In this document: in pieces, positions 3,458 through 32,850 of the stretch
Layout of the letters: each line of letters begins with the position of its first letter
Position numbering within the stretch: the first letter of the stretch is position 1
NCBI GenBank assembly: GCA_048772705.1
Contig: JBLWGC010000002.1
Location: forward strand, 186,001-250,000
Reading direction: 5' to 3'
DNA: 64,000 nucleotides
Source of the DNA: Leidyana gryllorum EB-2025a
Lineage: Eukaryota; Protista; Apicomplexa
Made by a program: the position numbers and the translations under genes
The notes under the pieces: model-generated
Told to the model about the DNA's origin: nothing
Seen by the model: only the letters and a program-made list of their open reading frames with translations
Databases searched by the model: none

Positions 3458-3609
3458 TGACAGGTGTGTCCCTTTTGACTGTACGTGCCTGTCATCCCAG
3501 CAAGCAGCTGTAGTGACATCAACTGACGTTCATAAAGTGTGTGTATATTTAATAATTTCGACTCCGAACGAAGTAGTTAAACACGTTCGAACACATTGTC
3601 AATATCCTC

Positions 3610-9024: not shown

Positions 9025-9875
9025 TGACAGGTGTGTCCCTTTTGACTGTATGTGCCTGTCATCCCAGCGAGCAGCTGTAGTGACATCAACTGACGTTCAT
9101 AAAGTGTGTGTATATTTAATAATTTCGACTCCGAACGAAGTAGTTAAACACGTTCGAACACATTGTCAATATCCTCATTGCGAACGACCAGAGTGATTTC
9201 TGGACTGTTCTGGAGGGTTTTATCGCTTAAATCGAGAACCTTGAGTGTGTCGAGCAAACCACTACTACCCCCGTACCAACCACAGTAGCTCCCACCGAGT
9301 CGGCAACGACCGCTGCTGCCACTCAGCCCACCGAACAGTCAGCGCCGTTGGCACCACTCAGCTGCTTCCTTCGGGCACGGACGAGTGAGAAAAACCCACT
9401 ATTTGCGACGAAGATGTCTTAATCATAATCGGGTTTGAACCCGCTCATCTCAACGTTGTTGTCAATGGGCGTCAAATCGCCGAGCTTTGGATGTGCACTA
9501 CCATCTTGCGAACCTAATCGTATTATCAGCTACTTTACCATCCATTATCGTCATCAATGAGACCTACGTACTACTTTATCGTTGCCGCACACGTTCGCAA
9601 ACTAAGCAGACACACGGTTTCAGCACACACGCACACCAAATTGGACTGTTGGTACAGCCAAACGACTTCTGGTGGCTTTGTACCACACAGATTCACCTCA
9701 TGTCAGCCCCTCAAGTTCATTTCGGGAGTTTGGAAGAAGTATGGCTGACCGATGAATTAAGAATTTAATGGATTGATCTATCAAATCTTATTGATTGATT
9801 ATTGGGGCAGATCGTAGAGATGGGTGAACGTATCAGTAGGGAAACCTTGGAACTAGAAGTGGAACCGAAGTGCCG

Positions 9876-11814
9876 ATGATGATGATGAAGACATCAGTGC
9901 TTGGAGCTATTTCTATGATCATGAGCGCCACCGCCGAAGGCAACACTATTGTTATGCCGTACATGGACTATGAAATCGTATTCGAGAACCTCGAGAATGT
10001 TGTCCGCCCTACAGCTCAAACACACGTACAACCTAAAGTCTTTCCTGGTACGTACAAATCTACATTCCACACACCACTCTTTCAACTTACAGGAAACCTC
10101 AAAATACGTGATCGTACATCCCATATGTCCTTCAGTCTCCCCCTGGAGACAGAGATGACGCTATTACGTCGTTTGACCAATCAACCTCTTTTGGTCGTTG
10201 GATCGTACGAAGATGCCGACTTGGCCGCTTGGCCCGAGCAAAATATAGTTGAAGAATGTAAGTTTGTCTAACAGGACATGTTCCCATGCTACGATCAGTG
10301 GAGGAAAATGCTGTTCTGCCTGTCGAATCTCAAGGCGAAGAGCAGTTGGATGGATTCGCTGATGAAGAAAATGTTCTGCTCGCCGTCACCCCGGACGAAG
10401 AGCAGTTGGATGTATTCGCTGATGCAGGAAATGTTGTGCTCCCCGTCACCCCGGACGAAGAGCAGTTGGATGGATTCGCTGTTGAGGAAATCGCGTTTTT
10501 GCCGGCCGAACCAATTGCTGAGGAGGAAATCAATGAACCCGCTGACGAGTTGGTCGAAGATGAGAAGTTCAACGGGTTCGTTGTTGAAGCCGATGCTCTC
10601 ACCCTGGAATCCGACGCGGAGGAGCAATTGGACGGATTCGTTGTCGCAGAAAATGCTGCTGGAGCCATCGAAGCCAGCAGCGAGGAGGAGGTGAATGGAT
10701 CGATTGTTGAACAGAATATTGTACTACCGATCGGATCGGACGAAGAGCATCTGGACGGTTTTGCTGTTCTTGTGGAGTCCAACGAGGGGGAGCAGTTGGA
10801 GGAAATCGCTTATGAGGAGGAGGCTATCGTTTCAGTCGAGTCAAACGACGACGACGAAGCCCAGTTGGATGGGTTCTCGGTTGGGGAACCCGCGAACGCT
10901 GCGGTAGAGAAGATACCCAGCGACATCGAAAGCAGTGATGGTGAGGAAGATCAGCCGTTACACGCAATATCCCGTCCTTTTTCAGTCGACACCTTTGAAG
11001 CTCCTTTGTTAGACATCATCGCTGATGCTGAACCCACTGCATCAGAAGAAACAGTTAGTGGTCAGTCCGCCCTCATCGACACCGAAGGTACGCACGCGCA
11101 GTTTCTTCGAATTCAACATCGCGCAGAAGTCGTTGGGGCACAGAACTCCGACCACGATGCAGAAAGCGCTGCCAAAGAGCCGCAGCCTGAATGTGAGTGT
11201 AGCCGTGGAATGCACTGTCAGACAGCAGATTCTTTCAGTCCCGCGCCGCGACATTATAGTCCAAACTTCCCCAGAAATCTCCCAGTATCTGCCGCTCATC
11301 CTGAATGGTCAGAGCGCTCATGGAAGTACCGATGAGTCGATGGAAGTGTCAATTGGTGAGTGGGCTGTCGGATTGATGAGTGAATATTGAACCCGCAGTG
11401 ACCGAAGTGGTGGAGGCACCTGAGGCCGTTGAGGCGGAGAAGAATAGAGTACCGGTGGTTTCTGAGATTGTGTTCCCCGAGCCCATTCCGAAGGGCCCCG
11501 CGCTCACCATCAATCATCTTCGATCTGCCCATGACGAAGCCGCTCGTCACGGAAGGAGTCTGATGGGGAGCTGGGCAGACTATCTGGCCGGCCTTGTACC
11601 CACTTGGGACGAATTGAAGTTCACGTTCCTTGGAATCTCTGATCTCGGATACAGCCCGGATGTAATGGATGAAGGATTCCTGAGATCAGCGCGTCGCTTC
11701 CTCAAAAATGGCGGTTTCACTCAGAACGTAATTATTGTGAGCGTGGCAGTGATCAGTGTTGCCGGTGTGTCCCTTTTGACTGTACGTGCCTGTCATCCCA
11801 GCGAGCAGCTGTAG
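9876..11814 (+). CDS. Acidic-repeat membrane protein, copy 4 (type B, extra intron 11356-11398)
   Basis: Nearly identical to copy 2. Confidence 0.8.
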
Positions 11815-12664: not shown

Positions 12665-14478
12665 ATGATGATGATGAACACATCAGTGCTTGGAGCTATT
12701 TCTATCTTCATGAGCGCCACCGCCGAAGGCAACACTATTGTTATGCCGTACATGGACTATGAAATCGTATTCGAGAACCTCGAGAATGTCGTCCGCCCTA
12801 CAGCTCAAACACACGTACAACCTAAAGTCTTTCCTGGTACGTACAAATCTACATTCCACACACCACTCTTTCAACTTACAGGAAACCTCAAAATACGTGA
12901 TCGTACATCCCATATGTCCTTCAGTCTCCCCCTGGAGACAGAGATGACGCTATTACGTCGTTTGACCAATCAACCTCTTTTGGTCGTTGGATCGTACGAA
13001 GATGCCGACTTGGCCGCTTGGCCCGAGCAAAATATAGTTGAAGAATGTAAGTTTGTCTAACAGGACATGTTCCCATGCTACGATCAGTGGAGGAAAATGC
13101 TGTTCTGCCTGTCGAATCTCAAGGCGAAGAGCAGTTGGATGGATTCGCTGTTGAGGAAATCGCGTTTTTGCCGGCCGAACCAATTGCTGAGGAGGAAATC
13201 AATGAACCCGCTGACGAGTTGGTCGAAGATGAGAAGTTCAACGGGTTCGTTGTTGAAGCCGATGCTCTCACCCTGGAATCCGACGCGGAGGAGCAATTGG
13301 ACGGATTCGTTGTCGCAGAAAATGCTGCTGGAGCCATCGAAGCCAGCAGCGAGGAGGAGGTGAATGGATCGATTGTTGAACAGAATATTGTACTACCGAT
13401 CGGATCGGACGAAGAGCATCTGGACGGTTTTGCTGTTCCTGTGGAGTCCAACGAGGGGGAGCAGTTGGACGAAATCGCTGATGAGGAGGCTGTCGTTTCA
13501 GTCGAGTCAAACGACGACGACGAAGCCCAGTTGGATGGGTTCTCGGTTGGGGAACCCGCGAACGCTGCGGTAGAGAAGATACCCAGCGACATCGAAAGCA
13601 GTGATGGTGAGGAAGATCAGCCGTTACACGCAATATCCCGTCTTTTCAGTCGACACCTTTGAAGCTCCTTTGTTAGACATCATTGCTGATGCTGAACCCA
13701 CTGCATCAGAAGAAACAGTTAGCGGTCAGTCCGCCCTCATCGACACCGAAGGTAGGAACGCGCAGGTTCTTCGAATTCAACATCGCGCAGAAGTCGTTGG
13801 GGCACAGAACTCCGACCACGATGCAGAAAGCGCTGTCAAAGAGCCGCAGCCTCATTGTGAGTGTAGCCGTGGAATGCAGTGTCAGACAGCAGATTCTTTC
13901 AGTCCCGCGCCGCGGCATTATAGTCCAAACTTCCCCAGAAATCTCGCACTATCTGCCGCTCATCCTGAACGGTCAGAGCGCTCATGGAAGTACCGATGAG
14001 TCGATGGAAGTGTCAATTGGTGAGTGGGCTGTCGGATTGTTTAGTGAATATTGAACCCGCAGTGACCGAAGTGTTGGAGGCACTTGAGGCCGTTGAGGCG
14101 GGGAAGAATAGAGTACCGGTGGTTTCTAGGATTGTGTTCCCCGAGCCCATTCCGAAGGGCCCCGCGCTCACCATCCATCATCTTCGATCTGCCCGTGACG
14201 AAGCCGCTCGTCACGAAAAGAGTCTGATGGGGAGGTGGGCAGACTATCTGGCCGGCCTTGTACCCACTTGGGACGAGTTGAAGTTCACGTTCCTCGGAAT
14301 CTCTGATCTTGGATACAGCCCGGAATTCATGGATGAAGGATTCCTGAGATCAGCGCGTCGCCTCCTCAGAGATGGCGGTTTCACCCAGAACGTAATTATT
14401 GTGAGCGTGGCAGTTATCAGTGTTGCCGGTGTGTCCCTTTTGACTGTACGTGCCTGTCATCCCAGCGAGCAGCTGTAG
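12665..14478 (+). CDS. Acidic-repeat membrane protein, copy 5 (type B, two 20-aa repeats shorter)
   Basis: 120-nt in-frame deletion of two 60-nt repeats. The apparent 2-nt frameshift near 13642 falls inside predicted intron 13607-13649, so the spliced frame is intact. Extra intron 14020-14062. Confidence 0.75.
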
Positions 14479-15499: not shown

Positions 15500-17008
15500 T
15501 TAAGACTTGACATCGGATCGAAAGAGTGTGGCGCTGAGCAAACTTCGGAATTTGGCCCGGCATCCTGGGGGGGTGGGCTCCTGATCATTTGTGGAGTACA
15601 GTTTGCGTAACCTTTCGAGGTCTGAGAAGGAGCAAGTTCGTTGTCGATACTCGAATTGGCCATTTCTGAGGCACATTCGAGAGCCTCGATCCTGTGCATT
15701 CCTTCGTTTATCCCAGTAGGAGCTATCGGGTGCGGGCGGAGTGTGTGTTAAGTGTGCAATGGAGGGTCGGTCTTGAAGCTGTTTGCGTCGTGGAGGTCTT
15801 CTGGGTCGTCTTTGATCGAGTACGGTGATATTCTTTGCATTCAGGAGATCGTGGGCGTAGATGGCGGCTCCTCGCGCGACGATCCCTTCAATTTCGACAT
15901 TGGGAAGTACGTAATCTTCATTTTTCCCCTCGAATTCGGCCCTAACTATCTTTTTGATTTTGGGGATCCGCGTGGAGCCTCCGATGAGGAGGACCTCATC
16001 GATTTCCTGTTTTTCAACTCCGGAGTACAGCATGAGATCTTTGAGAAGTTTTTGGCACTTCTTGAAGATATTGGCGTTGATTTCCTCGAAGGTCTCAATG
16101 GTAATGCAAAGAGTCCATTTTTCTTCATTGCTGATATCGAGTTCCAGATCAACGGCTGGAAGGGCTGAGAGGAGATGTTTGGCTTTGATACACTCATTGT
16201 TCAGCTTATATAAGAGTGGTTTGTCATTGGCGATATTTTTGTGATATTTCTTCTCGAATTCCCGGACACAATAATCGACCATATTATTGTCGATATCGAC
16301 TCCCCCACAGCGGTGGTCTCCTTCGCTGGCCTTGAGTTGAATGATAGTGCGATCCTTTTTGACAATTTTGATCAGTGAGGCGCCAGCCGACCCGCCGCCC
16401 ATCCCAAACACGACCAGAGTGGTCCCGGTGACGGTTCTGTTTGAGGCGTAGGCGATTGCGGTGGCAGTGGACTCGGTGATGAGGCCCAAAACATTCAGAT
16501 GGATAAAGGCTGCGGCGTCTCGAAGGACCAAACTTTGCGAATAGGAAAAGGCGTCCGGGAGAGTGAGGACAGCTCCATCAATAAATTGGCCAATAGCGCT
16601 GGAGGCAATGTCTATCATATGGAGGAGGAGGAATTCGACGAGATCCTGAGTGATATGCACTCTATTTTGGCCGACTTGGGTTGGGGGCAGTGGGATTTGC
16701 GCCTGATCGTTCATCTGGACGATGAGTGGGAAGGGCCAATGAGAGATGAAATATTCTGCCATTGGGTCGGCGGGCGTGAGACCCATCCATCGTTTGATGT
16801 GGAAAGCGGTTTTGTGAATATTCTCCGGAGTGCACCTCAGAGAAGCCGCGTCGCCCACAAACCGTTTCCCACTATCGTCAAACAGTATCACGCTGGGAAT
16901 AAGTTTCTTATTCTGTTCGAGATGAACGGTCTCCAAGCCCCGTTTCCCATTATGGATTGCCACACGACAGTAGCACGTCCCGAAATCCAATCCTATTCCG
17001 TCCATCAT
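15500..17008 (-). CDS. Atypical Hsp70-family protein 1 (NBD only plus basic tail)
   Basis: GLDFGTCY, HIKRWMG, LITESTATAIAY, FGMGGGS, GDHRCGGVDID, LIGGSTRIP, IVARGAA; no substrate-binding domain after linker NITVLD. First ATG at 17008. Confidence 0.9.
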   Translation of the reverse strand: MMDGIGLDFGTCYCRVAIHNGKRGLETVHLEQNKKLIPSVILFDDSGKRFVGDAASLRCTPENIHKTAFHIKRWMGLTPADPMAEYFISHWPFPLIVQMNDQAQIPLPPTQVGQNRVHITQDLVEFLLLHMIDIASSAIGQFIDGAVLTLPDAFSYSQSLVLRDAAAFIHLNVLGLITESTATAIAYASNRTVTGTTLVVFGMGGGSAGASLIKIVKKDRTIIQLKASEGDHRCGGVDIDNNMVDYCVREFEKKYHKNIANDKPLLYKLNNECIKAKHLLSALPAVDLELDISNEEKWTLCITIETFEEINANIFKKCQKLLKDLMLYSGVEKQEIDEVLLIGGSTRIPKIKKIVRAEFEGKNEDYVLPNVEIEGIVARGAAIYAHDLLNAKNITVLDQRRPRRPPRRKQLQDRPSIAHLTHTPPAPDSSYWDKRRNAQDRGSRMCLRNGQFEYRQRTCSFSDLERLRKLYSTNDQEPTPPGCRAKFRSLLSATLFRSDVKS

Positions 17009-17236
17009 TCCCGGGCCAATAATCTTTTTTGTTACCGACCATAACTCATTGTTCACTTATATAACGAAATACTCAACAATGTCATCTGTAATGGGCCCAA
17101 TATACATCGGGGGGCAGAGAGCAGCTCCCCCCCCGCTCCCTGCCCGCGGCTCGTCGAGAAATATCTCTCGCCGACTTGAGTAGGAGAGGCCTTTGTGCCC
17201 TCTCCTCCTCCTCCTCACTGCCCTCTTTTTCAAGGA

Positions 17237-18838
17237 TCACTCAGCGGCCTCAAAGTTGTCTTTGATGTGATCGATCTCAATTTCGGAGAGTCTGCCTTTG
17301 GCGTCGGCATCTTCGACTTCGAGATTTCGGTTATCCGATTTTTGGATCACAGTGAGGTGAGTGATACAGTCGGCGTCGATATCGAAAGTGGCCTCGAATT
17401 GGGGCCCTCCTTTGGGTCCGCGGGGGATATGTTCGATTTCATAGTGTCCCATTAAGTGATTTTCGTCCGTCATAACCCGGTCGCCTTCAAAGATTTCGAG
17501 GCTCAATGTGCTCTGATTGTCTGTGTGTGTGGTGAATGTGTCCTTTTTGGTCGTTGGAATGCGAATGAACCGATCAAAGACAATTCTCATCACTCCCGAG
17601 CCAAACTCGACGCCTATAGAGAGCGGGAGGATCTCGAGGACTCTCAGTTTCTTGGAGAGGGCGTCACTGGGCTCGCGGTGGTCTGCGAGGGTCGCGGCGT
17701 AAATGGCCGCTCCGCGGACAGCTGCGAGGTCGGGGTCGATAGAGCTGTAGTCACAGGACTGTTTGAGTATCTCTTTGACCAGTTTCCGGAGAGTGGGTAT
17801 GGCGGTCGACCGTCCCGAGAGAACAATCTCCGAGATGTCATTGGGTTTCAGGTTGGCCTCTTTGACAGTCTCTTCGAGACACATTAGGATTCCCAGGAAG
17901 AAGGCTTTGTTGACATCTTCGACGTGATTCTTTGTGAGTTTCATCGAGAACTCCATATCTTCGGTCGCCATAGACACTGTGGTTTCCTCCTCGGAGGAGA
18001 GAGCAATTTTGGCTTTCTCGCATACGTCAGTGAGCCGTCGCACAAAGAGGGGATCGTCGCTCAGATCTCGGTGAAACTTTTTCCTCAGTCGACCGATACA
18101 GTGGCGAGTGATATTATCCGTAAAGTCCTGACCCCCACACAAAGAGGCCCCCATTGTCGTTTTCACCTCCAATATGCCGTCCTCCACACTGATTATAGAC
18201 ACATCAAAGCTTCCGCTCCCCAAATGAAACACACAAATGTTCCGCTTCCCACTCATATCGGTATCCGCTGTGACTCCCTCAGCCTTCTCACGACAAGTTT
18301 CGTTAGTTATCGCCGCAGCTGTGGGCTCATTCACCAGTCGCAGCACCTCCAACCCGGCGATGGCAGCCGCATCCTTCATGGCCTGACGCTGGCCGTCCGT
18401 GAAACACGCCGGCACGGTGAGCACTGCCGATGCCACCTGCTGTCCCAAGTGCTCTTCAGCGAGTGCGCGCAGCTTCGCCAAGATGATGGCCACAACTTCT
18501 TCCGCGTGCAGAGTTCGCATTTCACCCCTATCGCGCACAAACAATAACGGTTTGTGGTGCCAATGATTCAATGGCCACCGGTTCGGATCCGACGAAGCGA
18601 TCGCATCGTCGTCCGATCGACGACCCAACAACCGTTTAATATCGTATATGGTGTTGCGCAGATTCTCCTGAGTTTGCTCCACTGCGTCCTGTCCCACCAA
18701 ACGTCCCCCATCCGTGAAAGCTACAACAGATGGAATCGTCGCAATGATCTCCACCTCTCCATTGTCTTTCTGCACAGCCACTCGCGAGAATGACTGACCG
18801 ACATCAATACCGATCGACACTCCTCGACCCGATTCCAT
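17237..18838 (-). CDS. Atypical Hsp70-family protein 2 (NBD plus SBD-beta, no lid)
   Basis: GIDVGQSF, TVPACFTDGQRQAMKDAA, LVNEPTAAA, FHLGSGSFDVS, FTTHTDNQ, FEGDR; ends just after GRLSEIEID. Confidence 0.93.
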   Translation of the reverse strand: MESGRGVSIGIDVGQSFSRVAVQKDNGEVEIIATIPSVVAFTDGGRLVGQDAVEQTQENLRNTIYDIKRLLGRRSDDDAIASSDPNRWPLNHWHHKPLLFVRDRGEMRTLHAEEVVAIILAKLRALAEEHLGQQVASAVLTVPACFTDGQRQAMKDAAAIAGLEVLRLVNEPTAAAITNETCREKAEGVTADTDMSGKRNICVFHLGSGSFDVSIISVEDGILEVKTTMGASLCGGQDFTDNITRHCIGRLRKKFHRDLSDDPLFVRRLTDVCEKAKIALSSEEETTVSMATEDMEFSMKLTKNHVEDVNKAFFLGILMCLEETVKEANLKPNDISEIVLSGRSTAIPTLRKLVKEILKQSCDYSSIDPDLAAVRGAAIYAATLADHREPSDALSKKLRVLEILPLSIGVEFGSGVMRIVFDRFIRIPTTKKDTFTTHTDNQSTLSLEIFEGDRVMTDENHLMGHYEIEHIPRGPKGGPQFEATFDIDADCITHLTVIQKSDNRNLEVEDADAKGRLSEIEIDHIKDNFEAAE

Positions 18839-19234
18839 TATGCAAACGATCAAATGTGCGATACCCGCGCATTACAACACATGCTGATCGAATCCCAATA
18901 TTGGGCGGCACCTCAATCCATTACATTCGGCTGGGGTACTTTGAACTTTGAACTTTAAATTCAAAAGTCGAAGCTCAAAACTCGCAGCCTTTTTCATCAA
19001 CCAGGGCTACTACCGTTAAGGCGACTGACAGTTTGACATACGTATACGGCGGTTTCGAAATAGTTATGGCCGCGGTCAGCATAATCAATGTTAGTCCCGT
19101 CTTTCAGAAGCGAAAGAGAGCTCTGATCGCAAAGTATGGCAAATGTATAACAGCGATGGATCAATCCAAGTTCTCGTGTCCCTTAATTCTTGACGCCTTG
19201 GATGGAATCTTCTTTTCAGGGCCCTCAATCTGTG

Positions 19235-19241
19235 CGTGTGC

Positions 19242-19275
<34 letters not shown>
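19235..19275. repeat. (GT)n microsatellite
   Basis: Long uninterrupted GT run just downstream of the Hsp70-like gene 3 stop. Confidence 0.95.
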
Positions 19276-19277
<2 letters not shown>

Positions 19278-19319
19278 GCTTTGAATGTGTGTTCACAATC
19301 CGCCATGGATATTTGTGGC

Positions 19320-20996
19320 TTAAGATGTGGGTGGCGACGCCGGATTGGGAGGCGACGTGGGGTTGGGGGGCGAGGCCGGGTTGGGGGGCGAGGCCGGGTT
19401 AGAGGCGGGAGCAGCGATTGGGGGGTTCCCTCTGTTCCAGTATTCGTCGAGCATTGTGGCGAGTCGGGCTCTGTCTTCGCGTCCGAGATGCGGTTTCTTG
19501 ACTCGGGTTTTGACGGGGAAGCCGTTTCGGGTTGCGCGTATATTGACGAATCCTTCCTCATCAAAGTCGAATAGGACGTCGACTTCGAGTTCTCCGGCGG
19601 CAGCCCGCGGGAGGTAACAAATGTAAAAGAGTCCCAGGAGTCTATTCTTGCGCATATCGCGATGTTCACCTTCGATGAGTCGAAGGATAATGCATTGTTG
19701 ATTGGTGACGGTGGTGTAGAATTTGCGAGCGCGGGTGGTGGGAGTGGCATCTGTGCGACGAATCAATGGCTGCAGCTCTCCAGAGGCGTCTTGGAGCATA
19801 ACAGAGTGTGAGGGGACCTCCAGAAAGTAGAACTGCTCATCGTGGAAGCATCCGTCGTGGTCGCTGATGACAGACGCGATGCAGGTGCCCAGTACGGCAC
19901 AGAGATCGTAGTTCATCTCGCGTCTGGGTGAGTCTCCGCGGAAGTATGAGCGAACTGCGCGTTTGACAGCCGGAATGGCTGTGGAACCGCCGACAAAGAC
20001 GATTTCCTGAACCTGATTGAGGACAGAGTACCTGACGTCTCCACTGAGTCGAGACAAGGCATAGGGGATCATATCCAAGTAGGGCTCTATGAACTTTTCG
20101 AAGAGTTCTCGAGACAGAGCGATCCTTGCATTTTCTCCGGTGCGGTGATTGATATCGAGTTCCACGACAGCCCAAAGCTGTTCGGACAGCTGATGTTTCG
20201 CGCGGTTGCACTCGTTCCAGAGTCGTGTGTACATTGGTGTGTTGGCCACGATTGCCACATCATAGACCTCCTCAATGGCGACTTGGCAGTATTCGACAAT
20301 TTTGTCGGTGAAATCCATTCCTCCGATGGGACATTCGCTCGCAGTCCCCTTCACATCGTACGCGTTGCCGTCGATCGACACGAACGACACGTCCATGAAA
20401 CCGCCTCCCATACTGAAGATGAGCACATTGTCCGGGTGCTCGTGGAAGTGGTCGGGGAACCCGTAGCCAATGGCGGCCGCCAAGGGCTCATTGATGAGCC
20501 GACAGCGCTCCAGACCCGCCAGAGTCGCCGCGTCCTTGACACATTGCCGTTGATACTCGTTGAACGACGCGGGCACAGTGATCGTTGCGGCAGTCACCTT
20601 TCCGCCGACGCGGATCTCTGCCTTCTTGACCAGATATTTAATGAGCATCGCGGCAATCTGTTCTGCGTAAAAGTTCTCCGTGTTGCCCTCCTTATCTATG
20701 GGCACGCGGGCCAACGGTCTGTCCTTCTGGAGCACCACATCCCACTGCCGACTTTGGATAATGTCAAACCCGGGCTCCTTTGCCGAGCGACCCAGCAGTC
20801 GACGGATGCGCTGCACTGATCTCGGACCCAATTCCTCTCCAATGACCGCATCGCCAATCTGAATTCCCTCTTCAGTAATGGCCACCGCAGATGGGATAGT
20901 CGTAATCACGTCGGGACTTCGGCGGTCCCTCAAGACAGCCACTCGGGAAAAAGAAGTGCCTAAATCGATACCAATACTCGGAATGGGGGGCGGCAT
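19320..20996 (-). CDS. Atypical Hsp70-family protein 3 (NBD plus SBD-beta plus Pro-rich tail)
   Basis: GIDLGTSF, TVPASFNEYQRQCVKDAA, LINEPLAAAIGYG, FSMGGGFMDVS, FVGGSTAIP; C-terminal (PASPPN)n. Confidence 0.93.
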   Translation of the reverse strand: MPPPIPSIGIDLGTSFSRVAVLRDRRSPDVITTIPSAVAITEEGIQIGDAVIGEELGPRSVQRIRRLLGRSAKEPGFDIIQSRQWDVVLQKDRPLARVPIDKEGNTENFYAEQIAAMLIKYLVKKAEIRVGGKVTAATITVPASFNEYQRQCVKDAATLAGLERCRLINEPLAAAIGYGFPDHFHEHPDNVLIFSMGGGFMDVSFVSIDGNAYDVKGTASECPIGGMDFTDKIVEYCQVAIEEVYDVAIVANTPMYTRLWNECNRAKHQLSEQLWAVVELDINHRTGENARIALSRELFEKFIEPYLDMIPYALSRLSGDVRYSVLNQVQEIVFVGGSTAIPAVKRAVRSYFRGDSPRREMNYDLCAVLGTCIASVISDHDGCFHDEQFYFLEVPSHSVMLQDASGELQPLIRRTDATPTTRARKFYTTVTNQQCIILRLIEGEHRDMRKNRLLGLFYICYLPRAAAGELEVDVLFDFDEEGFVNIRATRNGFPVKTRVKKPHLGREDRARLATMLDEYWNRGNPPIAAPASNPASPPNPASPPNPTSPPNPASPPTS

Positions 20997-21104
20997 TGTG
21001 TAATATCTCACTTCAAAGTCAATTCCACTTAATGTGTCTTAAGTGTCCACGCCCCATATTTCACTCACACACCTCAAGCATGCGACACGCTTGGCTTCTC
21101 CTCC

Positions 21105-22844
21105 TCAATCAAAGCTCACTAAGCGGTCAATGACCCCTTTTTCGATTTCAATATCGGAATGAAAGTGTTCTTTCTCCCATTTCTCATTCACAATCCGTAA
21201 ACTCAAAGACTCCACCCGCTTAGTCGCCGTTTCCAGACGTTCACTCGACAGTAACCCTTTCACAACGGTTATTCGGTGCGCCTCCGGGGCCACCGCCTGG
21301 AAGATGCCATTCGCGTCCACCTCCATCGCCAAATCTAACATCGGAACACCCCGTTCAGACGGACCAACGCTCTCAATGTCCACCGTACACAATACCGCCG
21401 TCCGCCCAGAATCACTCAAATCCTCAGCCTCACCCTCGTACACTTGAACAGCCACACTCGGCTGATTGTGTGCGTGTGTGGTGAAGGAGTGTGTGAATTT
21501 GGCGGGTATTGGTGAGTTGCGTGGGAGTAATGTACTGATTCCCTCGCGATTCACCTGGACGCCGATCGTTCTCGGACAGATATCGAGTGTGATCAGATCT
21601 TTCAGCTTTGTGGGGGTGCAGCCGGCTGCGATAGCGCCCACCAAAGCCGCCCCATAGACGACGACTTCCTCCAGCGGGGACTCTGTGCATTCGGTCTCTG
21701 ACTTGTTGAGAAACTCTAAGAGTCCCTGGCGTAACGTGGGGGTGTGGGCGGCTCCGCCGGCGAAGACAATTCGGAAAATGTTCACCGGATTCACCTTTGA
21801 GTCGTTAAGGGCGTCTTGAGTCAGACTGCAGACTTTTGCCACGAGATCTTTGAACAGATCTCTCAATTGATCTTTTTTGAGGACGACATTGATTTTGACG
21901 CCCTCCAACTCCACATCGATAGCCGTCGACGGGTCACCGATCAAAAGCACTTTAGCCTTCTCACACTCCTCAGCCAACCGACGGATACTCGTTGGACTCC
22001 CGCGCAACGTTTTCGTGTCGATCCCTCTCTTCTCCACCTCCTCCAAACAGTACCGCAGAATCGCGTTATCGAAATCGTCTCCGCCAAAGGCGCTCAGACC
22101 TTTCGTCACTCGAACCTCTGCAAAGTCCTGATCCATATTGACGATGGCCACATCCGTATTCCCGCCGCCCACATTCGCCAACAACACGTTCTGTGCTCCA
22201 AAGGACCACTCATTGTCAAAAAGGTACGCTACGCACGTCGCGGTCGTCGCCGTAACCAGCCGAAGCACTCGCAGCCCAGCAATAGCAGCCGCCTGCAACA
22301 GACTCTCTCGCTGACAGTCTCTGTAATGGGATGGGATCGTCAGAACGCACTCGTTCACACACTCCCCGAGGTGCTTCTCAGCCATCTCCTTCAGCTTCAA
22401 CAGAACCAAAGCGCATAGCTCCTGGAGGCTAAAGAAACTCTCTTTCGAATCCTTCGACCGCACACACACTCCCAACACATTGTCCTCTTCGACCGTCAAC
22501 GAGAACGGGAGGCGTTGCTGCTCGTCTTTCACGTGATCGTCGTCCAAATTCAGCCCCAGAAATCGCATCCACATAAACACAGTGTTGGCCAAGTTGTCCT
22601 CCCGGAACTGAGCCTCCTTGCTGGCCTCGCCAACAAGGATCTGCCCATCGGCACTGAACGTCACGTACGAGGGTATCGCTCGCTCCCCATTCCCGTCCCG
22701 AATTATCTCCACTTTCCCCTCTCGAAACACACTCGCCCGACAATGGTGGGTGCCGAGATCAAACGCTACCACACTCGACCCTTTGGCTGCTGGCATGGTG
22801 CACACTCTCTGGTCAACGAGTTTGAGGGGAGTCGGACAACGCAT
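21105..22844 (-). CDS. Atypical Hsp70-family protein 4 (NBD plus SBD-beta, predicted ATPase-deficient)
   Basis: AFDLGTHH, GERAIPSYVTF, ANVGGGNTDV, FGGDDFD, VVVYGAA, DLITLDICP, FTTHAHNQP. Alternative start at 22796. Confidence 0.93.
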   Translation of the reverse strand: MRCPTPLKLVDQRVCTMPAAKGSSVVAFDLGTHHCRASVFREGKVEIIRDGNGERAIPSYVTFSADGQILVGEASKEAQFREDNLANTVFMWMRFLGLNLDDDHVKDEQQRLPFSLTVEEDNVLGVCVRSKDSKESFFSLQELCALVLLKLKEMAEKHLGECVNECVLTIPSHYRDCQRESLLQAAAIAGLRVLRLVTATTATCVAYLFDNEWSFGAQNVLLANVGGGNTDVAIVNMDQDFAEVRVTKGLSAFGGDDFDNAILRYCLEEVEKRGIDTKTLRGSPTSIRRLAEECEKAKVLLIGDPSTAIDVELEGVKINVVLKKDQLRDLFKDLVAKVCSLTQDALNDSKVNPVNIFRIVFAGGAAHTPTLRQGLLEFLNKSETECTESPLEEVVVYGAALVGAIAAGCTPTKLKDLITLDICPRTIGVQVNREGISTLLPRNSPIPAKFTHSFTTHAHNQPSVAVQVYEGEAEDLSDSGRTAVLCTVDIESVGPSERGVPMLDLAMEVDANGIFQAVAPEAHRITVVKGLLSSERLETATKRVESLSLRIVNEKWEKEHFHSDIEIEKGVIDRLVSFD

Positions 22845-22938
22845 GCCCGCGCCAAAGTCTATCAGCGCGAGAAAAATACCACTGCACTCGCTCGCTCGCT
22901 GACAAAGTCCTCACTGCTGCCTGAGCGGTGCTGATGGA

Positions 22939-25346
22939 CTATTGTAACATTGCCAAGGGGTCACGCAATAATTGAGTCAGACCAGCTTGGATAAGATCTG
23001 GGTACATTGAGAGGGATCTAAAGGCTCGCCATTGTTTTCTGAGCTCAATAACTTTGAAGTCAAACTGGTCGGCAGACGCTTCTTGGTGATTCATTAGCCA
23101 TTGGCTGATCTCCTCAATAGACGTACGCAGCTGCCGCCATTCGATCTCATGCCTCAGATCGTCGGCCAAATACTTCTCAAACTGCATTTGTACTTCTCTC
23201 AAACACTTCTCGCACGCGGATTTGGCTCGCAACCGCTCTCTGCGACTGTGGATCTCCCGCCATTTCGGTTCGTCGTCATTGGCGTCACTGTCCGCTAAAA
23301 TCTGACCGACTTCCAATCCACTCGCACGACAACAGCCCGGAACGCGCATAACAACATAATCAGTAAACGTCTGCAGATCGCTCGAGAAAACGAGATGTCC
23401 GTTATCATCGACCACAAACTTTAGTGTAATTTCGGCCACAGTACCCGGACTGAGCTGAGCTTCAAATGCTCCAATTCGCTTTCCAAATGCAACGAACTTC
23501 CTTTCACATTCATAAATAACGATCCGTATTGATCCATCTTTGACGTCCGCTCGCCTCTGCACGACCTTCGACATCCCACACGGTATAGGTGTGTTGCGGG
23601 TCACTATAGGCTCAAACAACCCGTCCTCGTCCCCAATACCGATAGACAAAGGTACAACGCAAACGGGGATAACGTTCCGACCACAGTCCCCCAGTACAGA
23701 TCCCGTCTGGATTGCAGCTCCGCACGCCGCTATCTCCCCAACGGCGAGATGTTTGTCGGCAGAGCGATGACCTGCGGCCGCGGGTGAATGAGCACCAAAG
23801 TCAGATCCGCGATAGGGAGATACAGGGAAAAATGATAGCTTCGTTTGCCTGCCCGCGGGACTGTTCATACATGACGTAGTAGGACTCCGCGCCGTCCAAC
23901 AAGATCTGCCCGTCTCGTCATCACCCCGTCCGAGAGTAAACAGGGATGGTTGCTTCTGTGTTTGGGATCGCACACAAGGAGACCACACCACATCCAGTGT
24001 GGACGGGTTCAGAGGTAAGAGGTTCAAAGTAGTATCGGAGGCAACGGCAAGATCAACCAGGTCGTCCGGAGCCAGTGTGATGCTGAGCTCCTGACTGCTG
24101 AGGTAAGAACGGAGCAATTGCTGGAATTTCGGCATCCGAGCTTCGTGACCAACGATTATTAGATCATCCACTTCGCCTCTGTCAATTTGGGCGTCCTGTA
24201 AGGCCTCGCGCAATAAGGCGAGGCAGCGGCCGTAATTCTTTGTATTCAGCGACTCAAAGGTAGTCCGGCGCAGCGTGCATTGGAACTCGATCCCGTCATC
24301 ACATACCAATATGCGCGCACTGCTGGACTTGCTGAATTGCCGCCGGGCAAGGTCTGCGCGAACCCATAGTTGAGCTAGAGCTCGCCGACTTCGTATTTCG
24401 CATTTCTTCTGCTTGCAGAACTCCGACTCGACGTGTGTTACAATTGCATCGGTGAAATTATCAGCACCCAGATCGTGTTTCCTCACCACACACTCTTCGG
24501 AGACGGCCCCCTCAGCGCTTTTCAGGACGGTTACTTCGGATACTCGAGCTCCGAAATGATATATGACGGTTCTTTTCTCATTCGTCGTCATGGTGTCGCA
24601 GTCACTCCTTCGCCTGACTAATGGGCGTTGAATATTGAGCCCGAACGCTACCCCAACGGCGAAGGATTGTTTAATAACTTGACAGACTCGAAAGCCTGCC
24701 TTTTGAGCAATAATCTCAATGGCTCGAATTGTGAAACCATCAAAGTGGTTTGGTACGACGATAGTGGTCCTAGCGGAGAACCACTTCGAGTGGCGACGGA
24801 GGTACTTTTCGGCGTATGATCGGAGTTCTTGAAGGAATGCGAACGCTGCTTGCGCCGGCTCCATGGGGCAAGATCGTTTCACACCCAGGACGTTCGATAT
24901 AGCCGTCACAGCCGCTGCAAAACGGGCCCATTCCTTCTGAAGTGAAGCATGGTCGTGTTTCTCCCAAGTCTGGCTAATTAGCTCCCCGAAATCACTGATG
25001 CATACATCTGGATGATCTTTGGCAAAGGCACGAGCCCTTTGTCCGTACACAAACTTGGTTCCATTGTATGCTAGATACATTGGAATAACACGGTTGCCAT
25101 ATGGATCAGGTATCACCTCCACACCCCCATCACGAAACACAGCCAAACAGGCGTGCCGATCTCCCCAGTGGAGTCCCAATCGGAAAGCGAGATTGCCACC
25201 TACCCAAACACACACAGGTGGATTGGCGTCAATGATAGATGCACGAGCAAACTCACAAAGCAATCCGTCCTTCACATCGGCAACACCACCTCACGACCAT
25301 CGCAAACACTCACTCACTCACTCACTCACTCACCTTCGGACATCAT
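22939..25346 (-). CDS. Atypical Hsp70-family protein 5 (highly degenerate NBD with ~105-aa insertion; SBD and lid retained)
   Basis: Exon 1 25346-25334 (MMSE), 44-nt intron 25333-25290, then ORF to 22939. VEVIPDPYGNRVIP, VVPNHFD, DLGADNF, PLSIGI, RNTPIP, lid-like ISQWLMNHQEASADQF. Confidence 0.88.
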
Positions 25347-26271: not shown

Positions 26272-26400
26272 ACCATAAAATTACAAAGAGAAATATAACG
26301 TCCAATTAGTAGACGGCTTGCGTGCTCAGGTAAAAGTGTTGTCGCTCCCTTTGAAGAAGAAAGCAAATAAAAGTACTTGGTTTGAGTATTTGTGGTGACG

Positions 26401-27090
26401 ATGATGAAGGGTGGCTTCAAGCTGGACCAGTCGATGATGGCGGAACTCCAGCGTCAGCTGGGGAGTGGCAATCCGCTGGAGGCGTTGGCTGGAATGGCTA
26501 CTGGAGGCGGCGGTGGTAAGAAGAACCCACTCGCAGCTTTGGCGCCGGATTTGAGCGATTGCAAGGCTCTCCAGACCGCCATGATGCCGGAAATGGCACC
26601 CAGTGTGATCTATGGCCCCAATGTATCAGAGTTAGATGATATCTCCCGATGGACTATTCTATACCCTCAATATATCGATAAGAACAGGTCTCGGAAAGAA
26701 GGTCGTAAAATGGAACGAAGCTTATGTGTACGTGACCCTGAGGTAGGAGAAATGGCCGAGGCGGCCCATGAAATGGGCTTGAGATGTGTTTTGGAGAGAG
26801 ACAAGTGTTACCCACGAGACTTCCTGGTACGAGGAAGAGTTCGAGTTGAAACGAAGGACCCAGAAACTGGCGAGATACTGTACAACAAGACCGCTCTGAT
26901 GGAACTCATGGCGAGTGTCATGCTAAACCTAGAAAGTCGCACTCGACGGCTCGCTGCTGCTGCCGAGGCTGCCGCCAAACTCAAAGAAGCTCAGGAAGCC
27001 GAAGCCAAACAAGCCGCTAAAGCAGCAGCCAAAACGTCTAGTGGCAAAGGCAGCGCGGCCGCTTCCAAGTCCAAGAAAAAGAAGAAATGA
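26401..27090 (+). CDS. SRP19: Signal recognition particle 19 kDa protein
   Basis: RWTILYPQYIDKNRSRKEGRK, CVRDP, KCYPRDFLVRGRVRV, NKTALM, Lys-rich tail; N-terminal extension. Confidence 0.93.
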   Translation: MMKGGFKLDQSMMAELQRQLGSGNPLEALAGMATGGGGGKKNPLAALAPDLSDCKALQTAMMPEMAPSVIYGPNVSELDDISRWTILYPQYIDKNRSRKEGRKMERSLCVRDPEVGEMAEAAHEMGLRCVLERDKCYPRDFLVRGRVRVETKDPETGEILYNKTALMELMASVMLNLESRTRRLAAAAEAAAKLKEAQEAEAKQAAKAAAKTSSGKGSAAASKSKKKKK

Positions 27091-31011: not shown

Positions 31012-32850
31012 ATGACCAAGGAAGCTGCTCAGCAGTACAAAGCCCAAGGCAACACGGCCTTCCAGGTGCGTGCGTTCCTCCCAAAACTAAAGTTAGTCAT
31101 CACATCTTCCTCCTACACAGGCCCAACGCTACGAGGAGGCAGTAGACCTCTTTTCAAAAGCTATTGCCGAGGACCCCACCGATCATGTCCTCTACTCCAA
31201 CCGGTCTGGTGCTTATGCATCAATGAAGGACTACACCAACGCCTTGGAAGATGCCAACAAGTGTATAGAACTCAAACCGGACTGGCCCAAAGGCTACAGT
31301 CGTAAAGGATTGGCAGAACACAACTTGGGACACACACTCGAAGCCATTGAAGCCTACGAGGCTGGCCTCAAGTTGGACCCCAACAACGCCGCACTCAAAG
31401 ACGGCCTCGATAGCGCCAAGGCGGCGGGCAGCAGCTGGGCCCAAACCGCCCAGATGGAGATGGCCATCATGGCCAGCTTGTCGCAAGACCCAAAGTTCGC
31501 CAAATACATCCAAGAGGACCCGGAATACGTTCGCAAACTGCTGGGCATCTTCAAACAGATCAGTGGCGCTGCCGGTCAACCTTCCAATGTCGGTCTTTTG
31601 CAGGAAGCCTTCGCTATGGCTCCTCCACGGATCAAGGAGGGCCTCAGCAAACTGATGGGCATCCCCACCGACCCCTCTGACGACTTCCCTGCGCCTCCTC
31701 CTCCTCCCCAACCAACCGCCTCGGCTAAACCCCAGCAGCCAGCGGCGGCGCCTGAGCCCGAAAAACCGAGCGAAGAGAAGCAGGCTGAGGAGTTCAAGCG
31801 TCAAGGCAACAAGGCATACACCGAGAAGAAATTCGAGGAGGCTCTGGCCCTCTACGACAAGGCCCTGGAGCTCTGTCCCACCGAGATCCTCTACGTCAAC
31901 AACAAGGCAGCCGTGTACCTTGAAATGGGTGACTACGACCAGTGCATCAAGACCTGCGAGGAGGCTTTGGAGCTCCCGCGCGCAGGCGAGACTGCCTTCA
32001 GCAAAGTCGCCAAAGTATACGCTCGCATGGCCGGCTGCTATCGCAGACAGCGCAAGTACGACGAGGCCATCAAGATGTACCAAAAGGCTTTGACTGAAGA
32101 CTCAGACCGTCACATCAGAGCCGCACTTAGAGAGTGTGAACGGGAGTTCGAAAAGTGGCAAGCCGAACAATACATGAATCCCGAACTCGCCGAGGAGGTA
32201 AGTGTGTGCTATCGTGTGTGTGTAATAGGAGACGTCGATTTCTTTAGTTGAGATTGAAGGGTAATGAGCAATTCAAGAATAAGGACTACCCGGCGGCCAA
32301 GCAGACTTATGATGATGCGATCAAGAGGAATCCCAAGGACGCTCGTTTGTACGGGAACCGTGCTGCGGCTTACATGCAGTTGTTAGAGTTCCCAAGCGCT
32401 TTGAGAGATGCTGAGAAGGCTCTGGAGTTGGATCCCAAGTTCGTTAAGGCTTGGGCCCGCAAGGGAACCTGTCACTTGAAAATGAGAGATCACAACAAGG
32501 CTCTGACAGCTTATCAGGAGGGTTTGAAGATAGACCCCGACAACGAGGAGTGCAGGAATGGAATGAATATGACCCTGATGGCGGTCCAGCAGATGCAGCG
32601 AAGCAGTGAGGCCGATCCTGAGCAAATCGAGCGTGCTATGGTGAGTGTGTTGGTGTGTGTGAAGGTTTAAGATTGATTGAATTGTCAGGCCGATCCGGAG
32701 ATCCAGCAGATACTGTCTGATCCTCAATTCCGACTGATTCTGGAGCAGTTGCAGCAGGATCCAAGTCGGTTGACCGAGTTTGCTCGTGATCCAAAGATTG
32801 CGGCGGGTATTCAAAAGTTGATGGTAGCTGGAATTCTGCGTACAGCTTAG
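31012..32850 (+). CDS. STI1: Hsp70/Hsp90 organising protein (TPR1-DP1-TPR2A-TPR2B-DP2)
   Basis: [63 protein letters not shown]; introns 31066-31120, 32198-32247, 32641-32688. Confidence 0.96.

What the first reader, a model, noticed from the sequence alone, without database searches (positions are those of the whole stretch)
15500..25346. Cluster of five divergent, catalytically degenerate Hsp70 paralogues: candidate 'pseudo-Hsp70' system
Seen: five co-oriented Hsp70-fold genes packed head to tail, all with open frames, and so divergent from each other that there is no obvious DNA-level repeat. By eye against human Hsc70 motifs: D199 (IFDLGGGT) is replaced in all five (G, H, S, N, H) and T204 is replaced in all five (S, S, F, N, V). 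K71 is kept in genes 1-2, R in gene 3, M in gene 4 and lost in gene 5. E175 is kept in 1-3 and lost in 4-5. T13 is Q in gene 2, and D10/T13 are lost in gene 5. None has EEVD, an ER-retention end or a signal peptide. Established: K71, E175 and D199 support ATP hydrolysis and allostery, and known atypical members (Ssz1/HSPA14, HSPA13, Hsp110) are usually single, dispersed genes. Inference: an old tandem expansion kept intact for a non-canonical role such as a hetero-oligomeric scaffold, nucleotide sensors, holdases, or co-chaperone decoys, possibly stage-specific.
Basis: partly seen in the sequence, partly recalled or inferred. Interest (0 to 1): 0.88.

Follow-up and report, generated by a model that had tools for sequence, protein, structure and literature searches.

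The report
Five degenerate Hsp70 paralogues in tandem
Five neighbouring, very divergent copies of the Hsp70 chaperone gene in a gregarine-like parasite genome have each lost residues needed to split ATP yet remain intact; they are one of several such arrays among about 30 Hsp70-like genes, and their function is untested.

Summary
Five co-oriented minus-strand genes (15500-25346) all match Pfam HSP70 (E 1e-63 to 1e-125).

The genes share no DNA similarity and are only 16-33% identical to each other in the ATPase domain. Each is closer to the genome's own cytosolic Hsp70 (26-42%). All have open frames, coding-type base composition and confident Hsp70 folds (AlphaFold2 run on G1 and G5).

The organism is an apicomplexan. 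Its canonical Hsp70 is closest to those of the gregarines Gregarina and Protomagalhaensia.

The five are not an isolated system. The 15.5-Mb genome holds about 31 Hsp70-like loci, including a second array of at least eight genes and a canonical locus with a frameshifted pseudogene.

No orthologue was found: an exhaustive search of 1.84 billion proteins gave at most 36% identity. None is the Hsp110, BiP or mitochondrial type.

Best reading: an old, lineage-specific tandem expansion of cytosolic-Hsp70-derived atypical paralogues with impaired hydrolysis. A hetero-oligomeric "system", stage specificity and complete catalytic death remain untested, and no RNA data were available.

The scan's first readers had already noted similar degenerate Hsp70 arrays elsewhere in this genome.

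The parts
15500..17008 (-). G1: 502-aa Hsp70-like protein with a nucleotide-binding domain (NBD), an interdomain-linker-like strand and a ~100-aa Arg/Pro/Ser-rich tail. It has no substrate-binding domain (SBD). K71 and E175 are kept; D199G, T204S and D206G are changed.
   Evidence: Pfam HSP70 covers profile positions 2-377 of 599 only. tblastn finds no SBD remnant downstream. The AF2 model has mean pLDDT 81.7 with the NBD above 90, residues 395-398 as a strand and 408-459 disordered. Top PDB hits are Ssb and HSPA1A/B.
15503..15814 (-). G1 C-terminal tail (about residues 399-502), rich in R, P and S. It replaces SBD-beta and the lid.
   Evidence: Composition is R19, S11, L10 and P10 of 107 residues. 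pLDDT is below 50 over residues 408-459.
17237..18838 (-). G2: 533-aa lidless Hsp70-like protein (NBD plus SBD-beta, ending in lid helix A). It is the least divergent of the five. Changes are T13Q, D199H, G202S, T204S, G339R and R342A; K71, E175 and D206 are kept.
   Evidence: Pfam E 2e-125, profile positions 2-515 of 599. Alignment to Hsc70 gives 402 bits.
19320..20996 (-). G3: 558-aa lidless Hsp70-like protein ending in PASPPN-type repeats. Changes are K71R, D199S and T204F. It is sister to G2.
   Evidence: Pfam E 9e-91, profile positions 2-495 of 599. G2+G3 support is 99/89. Top PDB hits are HSPA2 and Hsc70.
21105..22844 (-). G4: 579-aa Hsp70-like protein with NBD, SBD-beta and part of the lid. 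Changes are K71M, E175A, D199N and T204N.
   Evidence: Pfam E 4e-104. PDB alignments reach Hsc70 residue ~546. No protein above 36% identity in 1.84 billion representatives.
22939..25199 (-). G5 exon 2: full Hsp70 architecture (NBD, linker, SBD-beta, helical lid) and the most divergent of the five. Changes are D10H, T13D, K71G, E175Q, D199H, G203R, T204V and D206E.
   Evidence: Pfam shows two stretches. phmmer against HSPA2 aligns residues 7-381 and 488-721. AF2 mean pLDDT is 77.7. Foldseek top hits are domain-docked BiP and DnaK, TM up to 0.80.
23758..24057 (-). A ~100-aa Ser/Ala/Thr/Pro-rich insertion in G5, between the PDE-like motif and the last NBD helix. It is predicted to be disordered.
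   Evidence: There is a gap between the two aligned stretches. pLDDT is about 28-36 over residues 381-480 of the exon-2 translation.
25200..25333 (-). Putative 134-nt GT..AG intron of G5. Its 5' end is a (GTGA)n run.
   Evidence: Read directly from the sequence. The ORF has no ATG before the conserved first strand, and the ATG at 25346 joins in frame. No RNA evidence is available.
25334..25346 (-). Putative 13-nt first exon of G5 (ATGATGTCCGAAG).
   Evidence: The model is inferred from frame and homology only.

Best explanation
These are five real protein-coding genes. They form an old, lineage-specific tandem array of fast-evolving paralogues derived from the cytosolic type of Hsp70, in an apicomplexan whose canonical Hsp70 is closest to those of gregarines. 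The array is one product of a genome-wide birth-and-death radiation that has left about 31 Hsp70-like loci in 15.5 Mb.

All five keep the Hsp70 fold and lack targeting signals and EEVD, so they are probably cytosolic or nuclear. G1-G4 also keep most adenosine-pocket residues. All five have replaced residues that position Mg2+/water and the gamma-phosphate (D199 and T204 in all; K71, E175, T13 and D10 in some).

Inferred mechanism: they work as 'atypical' Hsp70s, meaning they bind nucleotide and/or client but do not run the fast ATP-driven bind-and-release cycle.
- G3, G4 and G5 are most likely hydrolysis-dead.
- G1 and G2 are possibly slow ATPases.
- The lidless G2-G4 would behave as fast-exchange holdases or co-chaperone-like partners.
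- G1 would be a free NBD with a basic disordered tail.
- G5 would be a conformationally locked full-length form.

Shown here: gene structure, fold, residue changes, origin on the cytosolic side, absence of orthologues, and family context. Inferred only: expression, nucleotide binding, loss of hydrolysis, and any partner.
For: - Family and fold: Pfam HSP70 for all five. AF2 models are confident in the NBD and SBD. Foldseek top hits for G5 are full-length Hsp70s.
- Degenerate sites. The roles of K71, D199, T204, T13 and E175 are described in PMC2196005 and PMC12406271.
- Adenosine-pocket residues: K271 is kept in G1-G4 (R in G5). S275 is kept in all but G4. E268 is kept in G2 and G4 only. G338 is kept in all five.
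- Cytosolic origin: PDB bit scores rank cytosolic types (HSPA1A, HSPA8, HSPA2; for G1 also Ssb) above BiP, and BiP above mitochondrial Hsp70/DnaK where these were listed. In the careful IQ-TREE all five fall outside the DnaK clade (99/100) and the BiP group, on the cytosolic side (92/93).
- Tandem origin: adjacent G2 and G3 are sisters at 99/89. One clade for all five is not rejected (p-AU 0.237).
- Maintained by selection: the five have intact ORFs of 502-757 codons at only 26-42% identity to the parent type. A true dead copy between the two canonical genes is already frameshifted and truncated at 59-66% identity. The GC1/GC2/GC3 pattern equals that of canonical Hsp70 and other genes. 33-69% of universally invariant NBD positions and 10-16 of 20 invariant glycines are kept.
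- Family context: 40 PF00012 matches fall in about 31 loci, including arrays on C104 and C230.
- No orthologues.
Against: - There are no transcript, protein or population data. No sequencing run was listed, so expression is unproven.
- No orthologues were available, so dN/dS could not be computed. The selection argument rests on ORF integrity and internal controls only.
- G1 and G2 retain K71 and E175. D199S is the weakest of the three Hsc70 mutants compared, and T204V hydrolyses at a normal rate (PMC2196005). 'Degenerate' may therefore overstate their defect.
- All five are long branches (0.8-3.1 substitutions per site), so their placement and the cytosolic origin carry long-branch risk.
- The G5 intron and start codon are inferred.
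Confidence: 0.6

Rival explanations
1. At least G1 and G2 are still working ATPases and ordinary, if specialised, chaperones. The substituted residues are tolerated or compensated, so 'pseudo-Hsp70' is a misnomer for part of the cluster.
For: G1 and G2 keep D10, K71 and E175, and T204S is conservative. In Hsc70, T204V has a normal hydrolysis rate and D199S is the weakest of the three mutants compared (PMC2196005). G2 keeps 69% of invariant NBD positions and R171-type J-coupling residues.
Against: D199 is invariant in all 80 reference Hsp70s and helps coordinate the Mg2+ waters (PMC12406271). G2 also has T13Q, G202S, G339R and R342A. G1 has D206G and no SBD at all.
Confidence: 0.2
2. The five proteins form one co-functioning system: a hetero-oligomeric scaffold or a set of decoys or nucleotide sensors acting together. 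The genes would be kept adjacent for co-regulation.
For: The genes are packed tightly in one orientation with 94-481 bp spacers. Their domain make-up is complementary: NBD-only, lidless and full-length forms. ATPase-deficient Hsc70 K71M co-elutes with wild-type Hsc70 in a larger complex (PMC2196005).
Against: Adjacency is what tandem duplication produces by itself. The same genome has other arrays and about 20 dispersed copies. No shared upstream motif or heat-shock element was found. There are no expression data. No interaction was tested.
Confidence: 0.1
3. One or more of the five is simply this lineage's orthologue of a known atypical subfamily. For example, a lidless member (G2, G3 or G4) could be the Ssz1/HSPA14-type subunit of the ribosome-associated complex.
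For: From my own knowledge, lidless proteins of 533-579 aa with impaired catalytic sites resemble Ssz1/HSPA14 in size and design. Atypical Hsp70s evolve fast (PMC3879978), so similarity ranking can miss orthology.
Against: The top PDB hits of all five are canonical cytosolic Hsp70s and Ssb, not Sse1 or Ssz1. The same method does recognise the genome's Hsp110 at C208. No RAC_head (zuotin) match exists in the genome. Another lidless candidate exists elsewhere (L006). At most one of the five could fill that role.
Confidence: 0.1
4. The genes are decaying, functionless duplicates whose frames happen still to be open.
For: Branches are very long, catalytic residues are lost, domains are lost (G1, G2, G3), tails and inserts are low-complexity, and there are no detectable orthologues.
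Against: All five frames are intact at 16-42% identity, while a much younger dead copy in the same genome is already frameshifted. The chance of 500 or more stop-free codons arising at random is below 1e-10. Base composition is coding-phase. Structural glycines and the fold are retained with high pLDDT.
Confidence: 0.07

Closest known systems
Canonical cytosolic Hsp70 (HSPA8/HSPA1A/Ssa type; this genome's copies are at C230, L001:7225-9156 and L001:1466-3376)
   Same: It is the best PDB and profile match for all five. The NBD fold is the same, and in G2-G5 the SBD-beta is too. Linker-like hydrophobic segments are present, and there is no organellar targeting signal.
   Different: NBD identity is only 26-42%. 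D199 and T204 are replaced in all five, with further catalytic losses in G3-G5. None has EEVD. The lid is missing in G2 and G3, and the whole SBD is missing in G1.
Atypical regulatory Hsp70s of fungi and animals (Ssz1/HSPA14, Sse/Hsp110, Lhs1/Grp170), as described in PMC3879978
   Same: They are fast-evolving and have limited ATPase/allosteric cycling while retaining the fold. Truncated or altered SBDs are common. This is the functional class the five most resemble.
   Different: The known subfamilies are ancient, have 1:1 orthologues and stable low copy number (60, 54 and 54 copies in 53 fungal genomes). Here there are five mutually divergent copies in one array, plus more elsewhere, with no detectable orthologues. 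The genome's Hsp110 is a separate gene.
Laboratory ATPase-site mutants of Hsc70 (K71M, D199S, T204V, D206S, T13 variants)
   Same: G4 naturally carries K71M, G3 carries D199S and G5 carries T204V. PDB entries 1QQM (D199S) and 1QQN (D206S) appear among the hits.
   Different: The mutants are single changes in an otherwise canonical protein and act as dominant negatives (PMC2196005). The natural genes carry many further changes across interfaces, so their effects cannot be read from the single mutants.
Sporadic degenerate Hsp70s in other eukaryotes (for example Phytophthora ramorum P0307, Elysia chlorotica P0351, Pristionchus P0284 and metagenomic P0381/P0379 with K71M)
   Same: They are single-domain-set Hsp70 homologues with substitutions at the same catalytic positions. 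46 of the 149 fetched hits of G4 deviate from the consensus at these positions, although about 11 of those merely lack the N-terminal columns. They group loosely with G1-G4 in the tree.
   Different: Identity to G4 is only 27-36%, with no supported sister relationship, so the grouping is likely long-branch attraction. None is from a gregarine, and none was seen in a comparable array.

Membership tests
Hsp70 superfamily (Pfam PF00012) | Actin-like two-lobed nucleotide-binding domain recognised by the family profile | tested here: met
   All five score 213-420 bits against a 20.6-bit cut-off. AF2 NBD pLDDT is above 90 for G1 and G5. Foldseek probability is 1.00 to Hsp70 structures.
Hsp70 superfamily (Pfam PF00012) | C-terminal substrate-binding beta-sandwich followed by a helical lid | tested here: inconclusive
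   SBD-beta is present in G2-G5 and absent in G1, with no remnant downstream. The lid is complete only in G5, partial in G4, and absent in G2 and G3.
Canonical (cycling) Hsp70 | Invariant catalytic and phosphate-loop residues D10, T13, K71, E175, D199, T204 and D206 | tested here: not met
   D199 and T204 are replaced in all five. K71 is lost in G3-G5 and E175 in G4-G5. T13 is lost in G2 and G5, and D10 in G5. D206 is lost in G1 and G5.
Canonical cytosolic Hsp70 | C-terminal EEVD motif for TPR co-chaperones | tested here: not met
   The C-termini end in DVKS, EAAE, PPTS, VSFD and AMLQ. The genome's two canonical copies end in EEVD.
BiP/Kar2 (ER Hsp70) | N-terminal signal peptide and an H/KDEL end; groups with BiP | tested here: not met
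   There is no hydrophobic N-terminus: the maximum 10-aa Kyte-Doolittle value is 1.7 or less, and it lies in the first NBD strand. There is no retention motif. The genome's BiP is L005 and groups with the BiP references.
Mitochondrial Hsp70 / DnaK | Groups with DnaK-type sequences; has a presequence | tested here: not met
   All five lie outside the DnaK clade (99/100). DnaK and mortalin score below the cytosolic Hsp70s for G2, G4 and G5 and did not reach the listing cut-offs used for G1 and G3.
Hsp110/Sse | Best match to Sse1/Hsp105; extended SBD with an acidic insertion and a long lid | tested here: not met
   Sse1 is not among the top sequence hits of any of the five. It ranks only 46th or lower in the structural search for G5. 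The same sequence search puts Sse1/Hsp105 first for the separate gene on C208.
Ssz1/HSPA14 (ribosome-associated complex subunit) | Orthology to Ssz1/HSPA14 and pairing with a zuotin-type J-protein | tested here: inconclusive
   No Ssz1 or HSPA14 reference sequence could be brought into the tree. PDB ranking favours canonical Hsp70. There is no RAC_head match in the genome, although this is a short, fast-evolving domain. The lidless design of G2-G4 is compatible.
Atypical Hsp70 (functional class, sensu PMC3879978) | Limited ability to run the ATP-driven client bind-and-release cycle | not testable with these tools
   This is inferred from residue changes only. It needs ATPase and client-release assays.

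The most novel reading that the evidence does not exclude
This apicomplexan lineage has evolved a large radiation of about 25 or more 'pseudo-Hsp70' proteins, organised in several tandem arrays. These would have left the chaperone cycle and taken on new roles such as client-specific holdases, scaffolds, or regulators or decoys of the canonical Hsp70/J/Hop machinery. That would be an Hsp70 counterpart of pseudokinase radiations. It would also explain why Hsp70-like loci (about 31) outnumber J-domain loci (about 16), the reverse of the usual eukaryotic ratio.
Probability: 0.3. Interest if true: 0.8.

Novelty: new variant of a known kind. Interest (0 to 1): 0.58.

Why it matters
Atypical Hsp70s are usually a few ancient genes with stable copy number (PMC3879978). 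ATPase-site mutants of Hsc70 act as dominant negatives in cells (PMC2196005).

A compact 15.5-Mb parasite genome that keeps five intact, mutually unrelated-looking, catalytically compromised Hsp70 derivatives in one array, and many more elsewhere, would show two things. The Hsp70 fold can be recruited repeatedly for non-cycling roles. And cells can tolerate, or exploit, many such copies beside the canonical machine.

It gives chaperone biologists a natural series for dissecting which parts of the fold matter without the cycle: K71M/E175A/D199N, D199S, T204V, NBD-only, lidless and insert-bearing forms. It also gives gregarine and apicomplexan genomics a marked lineage-specific family.

Without expression or biochemical data it remains a well-documented genomic observation rather than a demonstrated system.

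Tried and rejected
- Word-indexed homologue search with G2. It was swamped by bacterial DnaK (best 40% identity) and is useless for finding orthologues.
- Exact look-ups of the five proteins and the canonical Hsp70. None is in the collection, so the genome's proteins are not public there.
- Sequencing-run search on the whole cluster. None was listed, so read laying was not used and expression, intron and start could not be checked.
- Exhaustive phmmer with G4, with name and context look-ups. The best hits are ordinary BiP and Hsc70. The tree neighbours P0268 (a metagenomic contig with PARP and kinase genes) and P0333 (a 2-kb contig) are not orthologues and not in arrays.
- Synteny through the neighbouring SRP19 gene. 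Only one weak metagenomic hit came back and no Gregarina orthologue, so this was a dead end. The Gregarina niphandrodes canonical Hsp70 locus has no tandem Hsp70.
- Search for an SBD remnant after G1, or lid remnants after G2. None was found.
- Heat-shock elements or shared upstream motifs. None was found.
- PDB ranking to spot an Ssz-type member (L006). It does not discriminate.
- Literature searches for gregarine or apicomplexan Hsp70 expansions. Nothing relevant was found.
- Complex prediction was not run, because I make no claim that particular proteins bind.
- For G5, all searches and the fold used exon 2 alone by reference (window:22942-25197:-). The joined exon1+exon2 product was read only in a local script, to inspect its N-terminus, and was not searched.

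Full report
**Observation.** The region holds five minus-strand ORFs of 518-778 codons. Each matches Pfam HSP70 far above the cut-off, at E 7e-63 to 2e-125.

With ATG starts the gene models are:
- G1 15500-17008
- G2 17237-18838
- G3 19320-20996
- G4 21105-22844
- G5 22939-25199, plus a 13-nt first exon at 25334-25346

G5's frame has no ATG upstream of the conserved first beta-strand. An ATG at 25346 joins in frame over a 134-nt GT..AG intron whose 5' end is a (GTGA)n run. This model is inferred, because no RNA data exist.

Spacers between the genes are only 94-481 bp. The five share no DNA similarity beyond one 24-bp match.

**Domain make-up.**
- G1 is an NBD followed by a short linker-like strand and a ~100-residue Arg/Pro/Ser-rich tail. 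tblastn finds no SBD remnant downstream. AlphaFold2 gives pLDDT above 90 for the NBD and below 50 for residues 408-459.
- G2 and G3 have an NBD plus SBD-beta and stop at or before lid helix A. G3 ends in PASPPN-type repeats.
- G4 reaches about Hsc70 residue 546, which is part of the lid.
- G5 has the full architecture including the lid, interrupted by a ~100-residue disordered insertion just before the last NBD helix. Its model superposes on domain-docked BiP and DnaK structures (Foldseek E 3e-42, TM up to 0.80).
- None ends in EEVD or an ER-retention motif, and none has a hydrophobic N-terminus. The genome's two canonical cytosolic copies end in EEVD, and its BiP has a signal peptide.

**Catalytic residues.** I aligned all copies to a profile built from 40 DnaK and 40 eukaryotic cytosolic Hsp70s.
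- D199: G, H, S, N, H
- T204: S, S, F, N, V
- K71: K, K, R, M, G
- E175: E, E, E, A, Q
- T13Q in G2
- D10H and T13D in G5

Independent phmmer alignments to bovine Hsc70 (G2) and to human HSPA2 (G5) agree.

The adenosine-pocket positions are mostly retained in G1-G4. K271 is kept in G1-G4, S275 in all but G4, G338 in all five, and the GG of the HLGG motif in G1-G4. Nucleotide binding is therefore plausible for these four and doubtful for G5, which keeps only 33% of universally invariant NBD positions.

- K71, D199 and T204 lie in the nucleotide site.
- K71M is the strongest ATPase-deficient dominant negative.
- T204V hydrolyses normally but binds ATP about 100-fold more weakly.
- D199S is the weakest of the three mutants (PMC2196005).
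- T13 hydrogen-bonds the gamma-phosphate.
- D10, E175 and D199 hold the Mg2+ waters and contribute to allostery (PMC12406271).

From this, G3-G5 are very probably hydrolysis-dead. G1 and G2 may be slow enzymes.

**Organism and genome context.** The window is C2:186001-250000 of a 15.5-Mb, 237-contig assembly. Its canonical Hsp70 is 77% identical to those of Gregarina niphandrodes and Protomagalhaensia wolfi, and 75-76% identical to those of Eimeria, Vitrella and Chromera. It groups with the Gregarina sequence in the tree at 90/94. The organism is therefore an apicomplexan and probably a gregarine. Its proteins are not in the public collection.

The five genes are not unique in this genome. A six-frame profile search gives 40 PF00012 matches in about 31 loci. 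These include:
- a second minus-strand array of at least eight genes at C104:1252909-1268878, with its own signature (K71R, D206K, altered GGG loop);
- a canonical locus on C230 with two EEVD copies, a lidless paralogue, an NBD-only gene and a dead fragment;
- separate Hsp110 and BiP genes.

J-domain loci number only about 16. First-stage notes elsewhere in this genome describe the same arrays. I verified their existence only through.

**Origin.** Within the NBD the five are 16-33% identical to one another but 26-42% identical to the canonical cytosolic copy. PDB bit scores for every one rank cytosolic types (HSPA1A, HSPA8, HSPA2; for G1 also Ssb) above BiP, and BiP above mitochondrial Hsp70/DnaK where these were listed.

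I built a careful IQ-TREE of 42 NBDs under LG+C20+F+G4 PMSF. It shows:
- all five lie outside the DnaK clade (99/100) and the BiP group, on the cytosolic side (92/93);
- the adjacent G2 and G3 are sisters (99/89);
- G1, G4 and G5 are unresolved long branches of 1.5-3.1 substitutions per site.

Forcing all five into one clade costs 7 log-likelihood units and is not rejected (p-AU 0.237). A single tandem origin is therefore possible but not shown. Long-branch artefacts remain a caveat.

**Orthologues.** An exhaustive phmmer search of G4 against 1.84 billion representatives found 33,534 homologues. None exceeded 36% identity. The best single-domain hits are ordinary BiP and Hsc70 of animals and plants.

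Of the 149 top hits that were fetched, 46 deviate from the consensus at the catalytic positions, though about 11 of these merely lack the N-terminal columns. The ones I looked up come from Phytophthora, a sea slug, a nematode and metagenomes, not from gregarines. The two loose tree neighbours are not in arrays.

The Gregarina niphandrodes Hsp70 locus has no tandem copies. A synteny attempt through the neighbouring SRP19 gene failed. No 1:1 orthologue was therefore detected, with the caveat that very divergent gregarine co-orthologues could hide among generic hits.

**Are they functional genes?** There is no direct evidence, because no sequencing run was listed. The indirect evidence is consistent:
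- All five frames are open over 502-757 codons at 26-42% identity to the parent type. By contrast, a copy between the two canonical genes that is still 59-66% identical is already frameshifted and truncated. Dead Hsp70 copies in this genome evidently decay quickly.
- Position-specific GC content (GC1 0.55-0.60, GC2 0.39-0.44, GC3 0.52-0.65) matches that of the canonical Hsp70 and neighbouring genes.
- 10-16 of 20 invariant glycines are kept, and the fold is predicted confidently for G1 and G5, the two that were folded.

**Mechanism (inferred).** The most economical reading is that these are additional 'atypical' Hsp70s. Atypical Hsp70s have the Hsp70 fold but do not run the full ATP-driven client cycle, and in fungi they evolve fast under relaxed constraint (PMC3879978).

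On this reading:
- The lidless G2-G4 would bind clients with fast kinetics, or serve as partners of J-proteins or of the canonical Hsp70.
- G1 would be a free NBD plus linker with a basic disordered tail.
- G5 would be a full-length form whose NBD can hardly sense ATP.

Nothing tested here shows that the five act together. Adjacency follows from tandem duplication. I did not run a complex prediction because I make no binding claim.

**Comparison and novelty.** The five are members of the Hsp70 superfamily. By tested criteria they are not canonical cycling Hsp70s. They are also not the Hsp110, BiP or mitochondrial types. Ssz1/HSPA14 orthology for one lidless member could not be excluded: no reference sequences were available, and there is no RAC_head match in the genome.

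What is unusual is the number of copies, their mutual divergence and their tandem organisation. In 53 fungal genomes the atypical subfamilies stay at about one copy each. I rate this a new variant of a known kind.

**Limits.** G5 was searched and folded as exon 2 only, by reference. The joined product was not searched. Read laying was not used because no runs were listed.

Noticed in passing
L003:603-9901 and L004:586-8894 (G000:C104:1252909-1268878): A second minus-strand tandem array of at least eight Hsp70-like genes runs to within about 500 bp of a contig end. The genes share K71R, D206K and an altered GGG loop, and form their own clade (96/80). That clade joins two dispersed copies, L009 and L011 (100/98). 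One member has an in-frame TGA. Several end in a Cys-rich C-terminal motif instead of a lid.
   Followed up: partly
L001:1463-9165 and L002:6188-7504 (G000:C230:1579055-1594793): The canonical Hsp70 locus is itself an array. Two EEVD-ending copies (88% identical) flank a lidless 559-aa paralogue (T14V, 55% identical) and a frameshifted, truncated pseudogene fragment (L001:5865-6805, 59-66% identical). An NBD-only gene lies about 8 kb away.
   Followed up: partly
window 31223-32251 (+): A 342-aa ORF with four or more TPR repeats matches human Hop/STI1 residues 53-362 (E 1e-63). It is probably one exon of the Hsp70-Hsp90 organising protein. It lies about 6 kb from G5 on the opposite strand. The five Hsp70-like genes lack the EEVD motif that Hop binds.
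   Followed up: partly
whole genome G000: Hsp70-like loci (about 31) outnumber J-domain loci (about 16; 19 matches). From my own knowledge, this reverses the usual eukaryotic ratio. No RAC_head (zuotin) match was found.
   Followed up: partly
window 1945-11335 (+): A tandem duplication with a period of about 5.56 kb carries ORF triplets of 358/259/349 aa and 359/259/349 aa with no Pfam domains. Related smaller ORFs lie at 13075-14478, directly downstream of G1.
   Followed up: no
window 26392-27090 (+): An SRP19-domain gene lies about 1 kb upstream of G5 on the opposite strand. The word-based search found only one weak homologue (32% identity), which suggests generally fast protein evolution in this genome.
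   Followed up: partly
window about 19244-19274 and 25290-25333: There is a (GT)n/(CA)n microsatellite in the G3-G2 spacer. A (GTGA)n run forms the 5' end of the putative G5 intron. It offers several alternative donor sites, some of them in frame.
   Followed up: no
G000:C182:81800-81937 and C182:85074-86192 (L010): A J-domain ORF lies about 3 kb from another degenerate Hsp70-like gene. This may be a co-chaperone/Hsp70-like gene pair.
   Followed up: no
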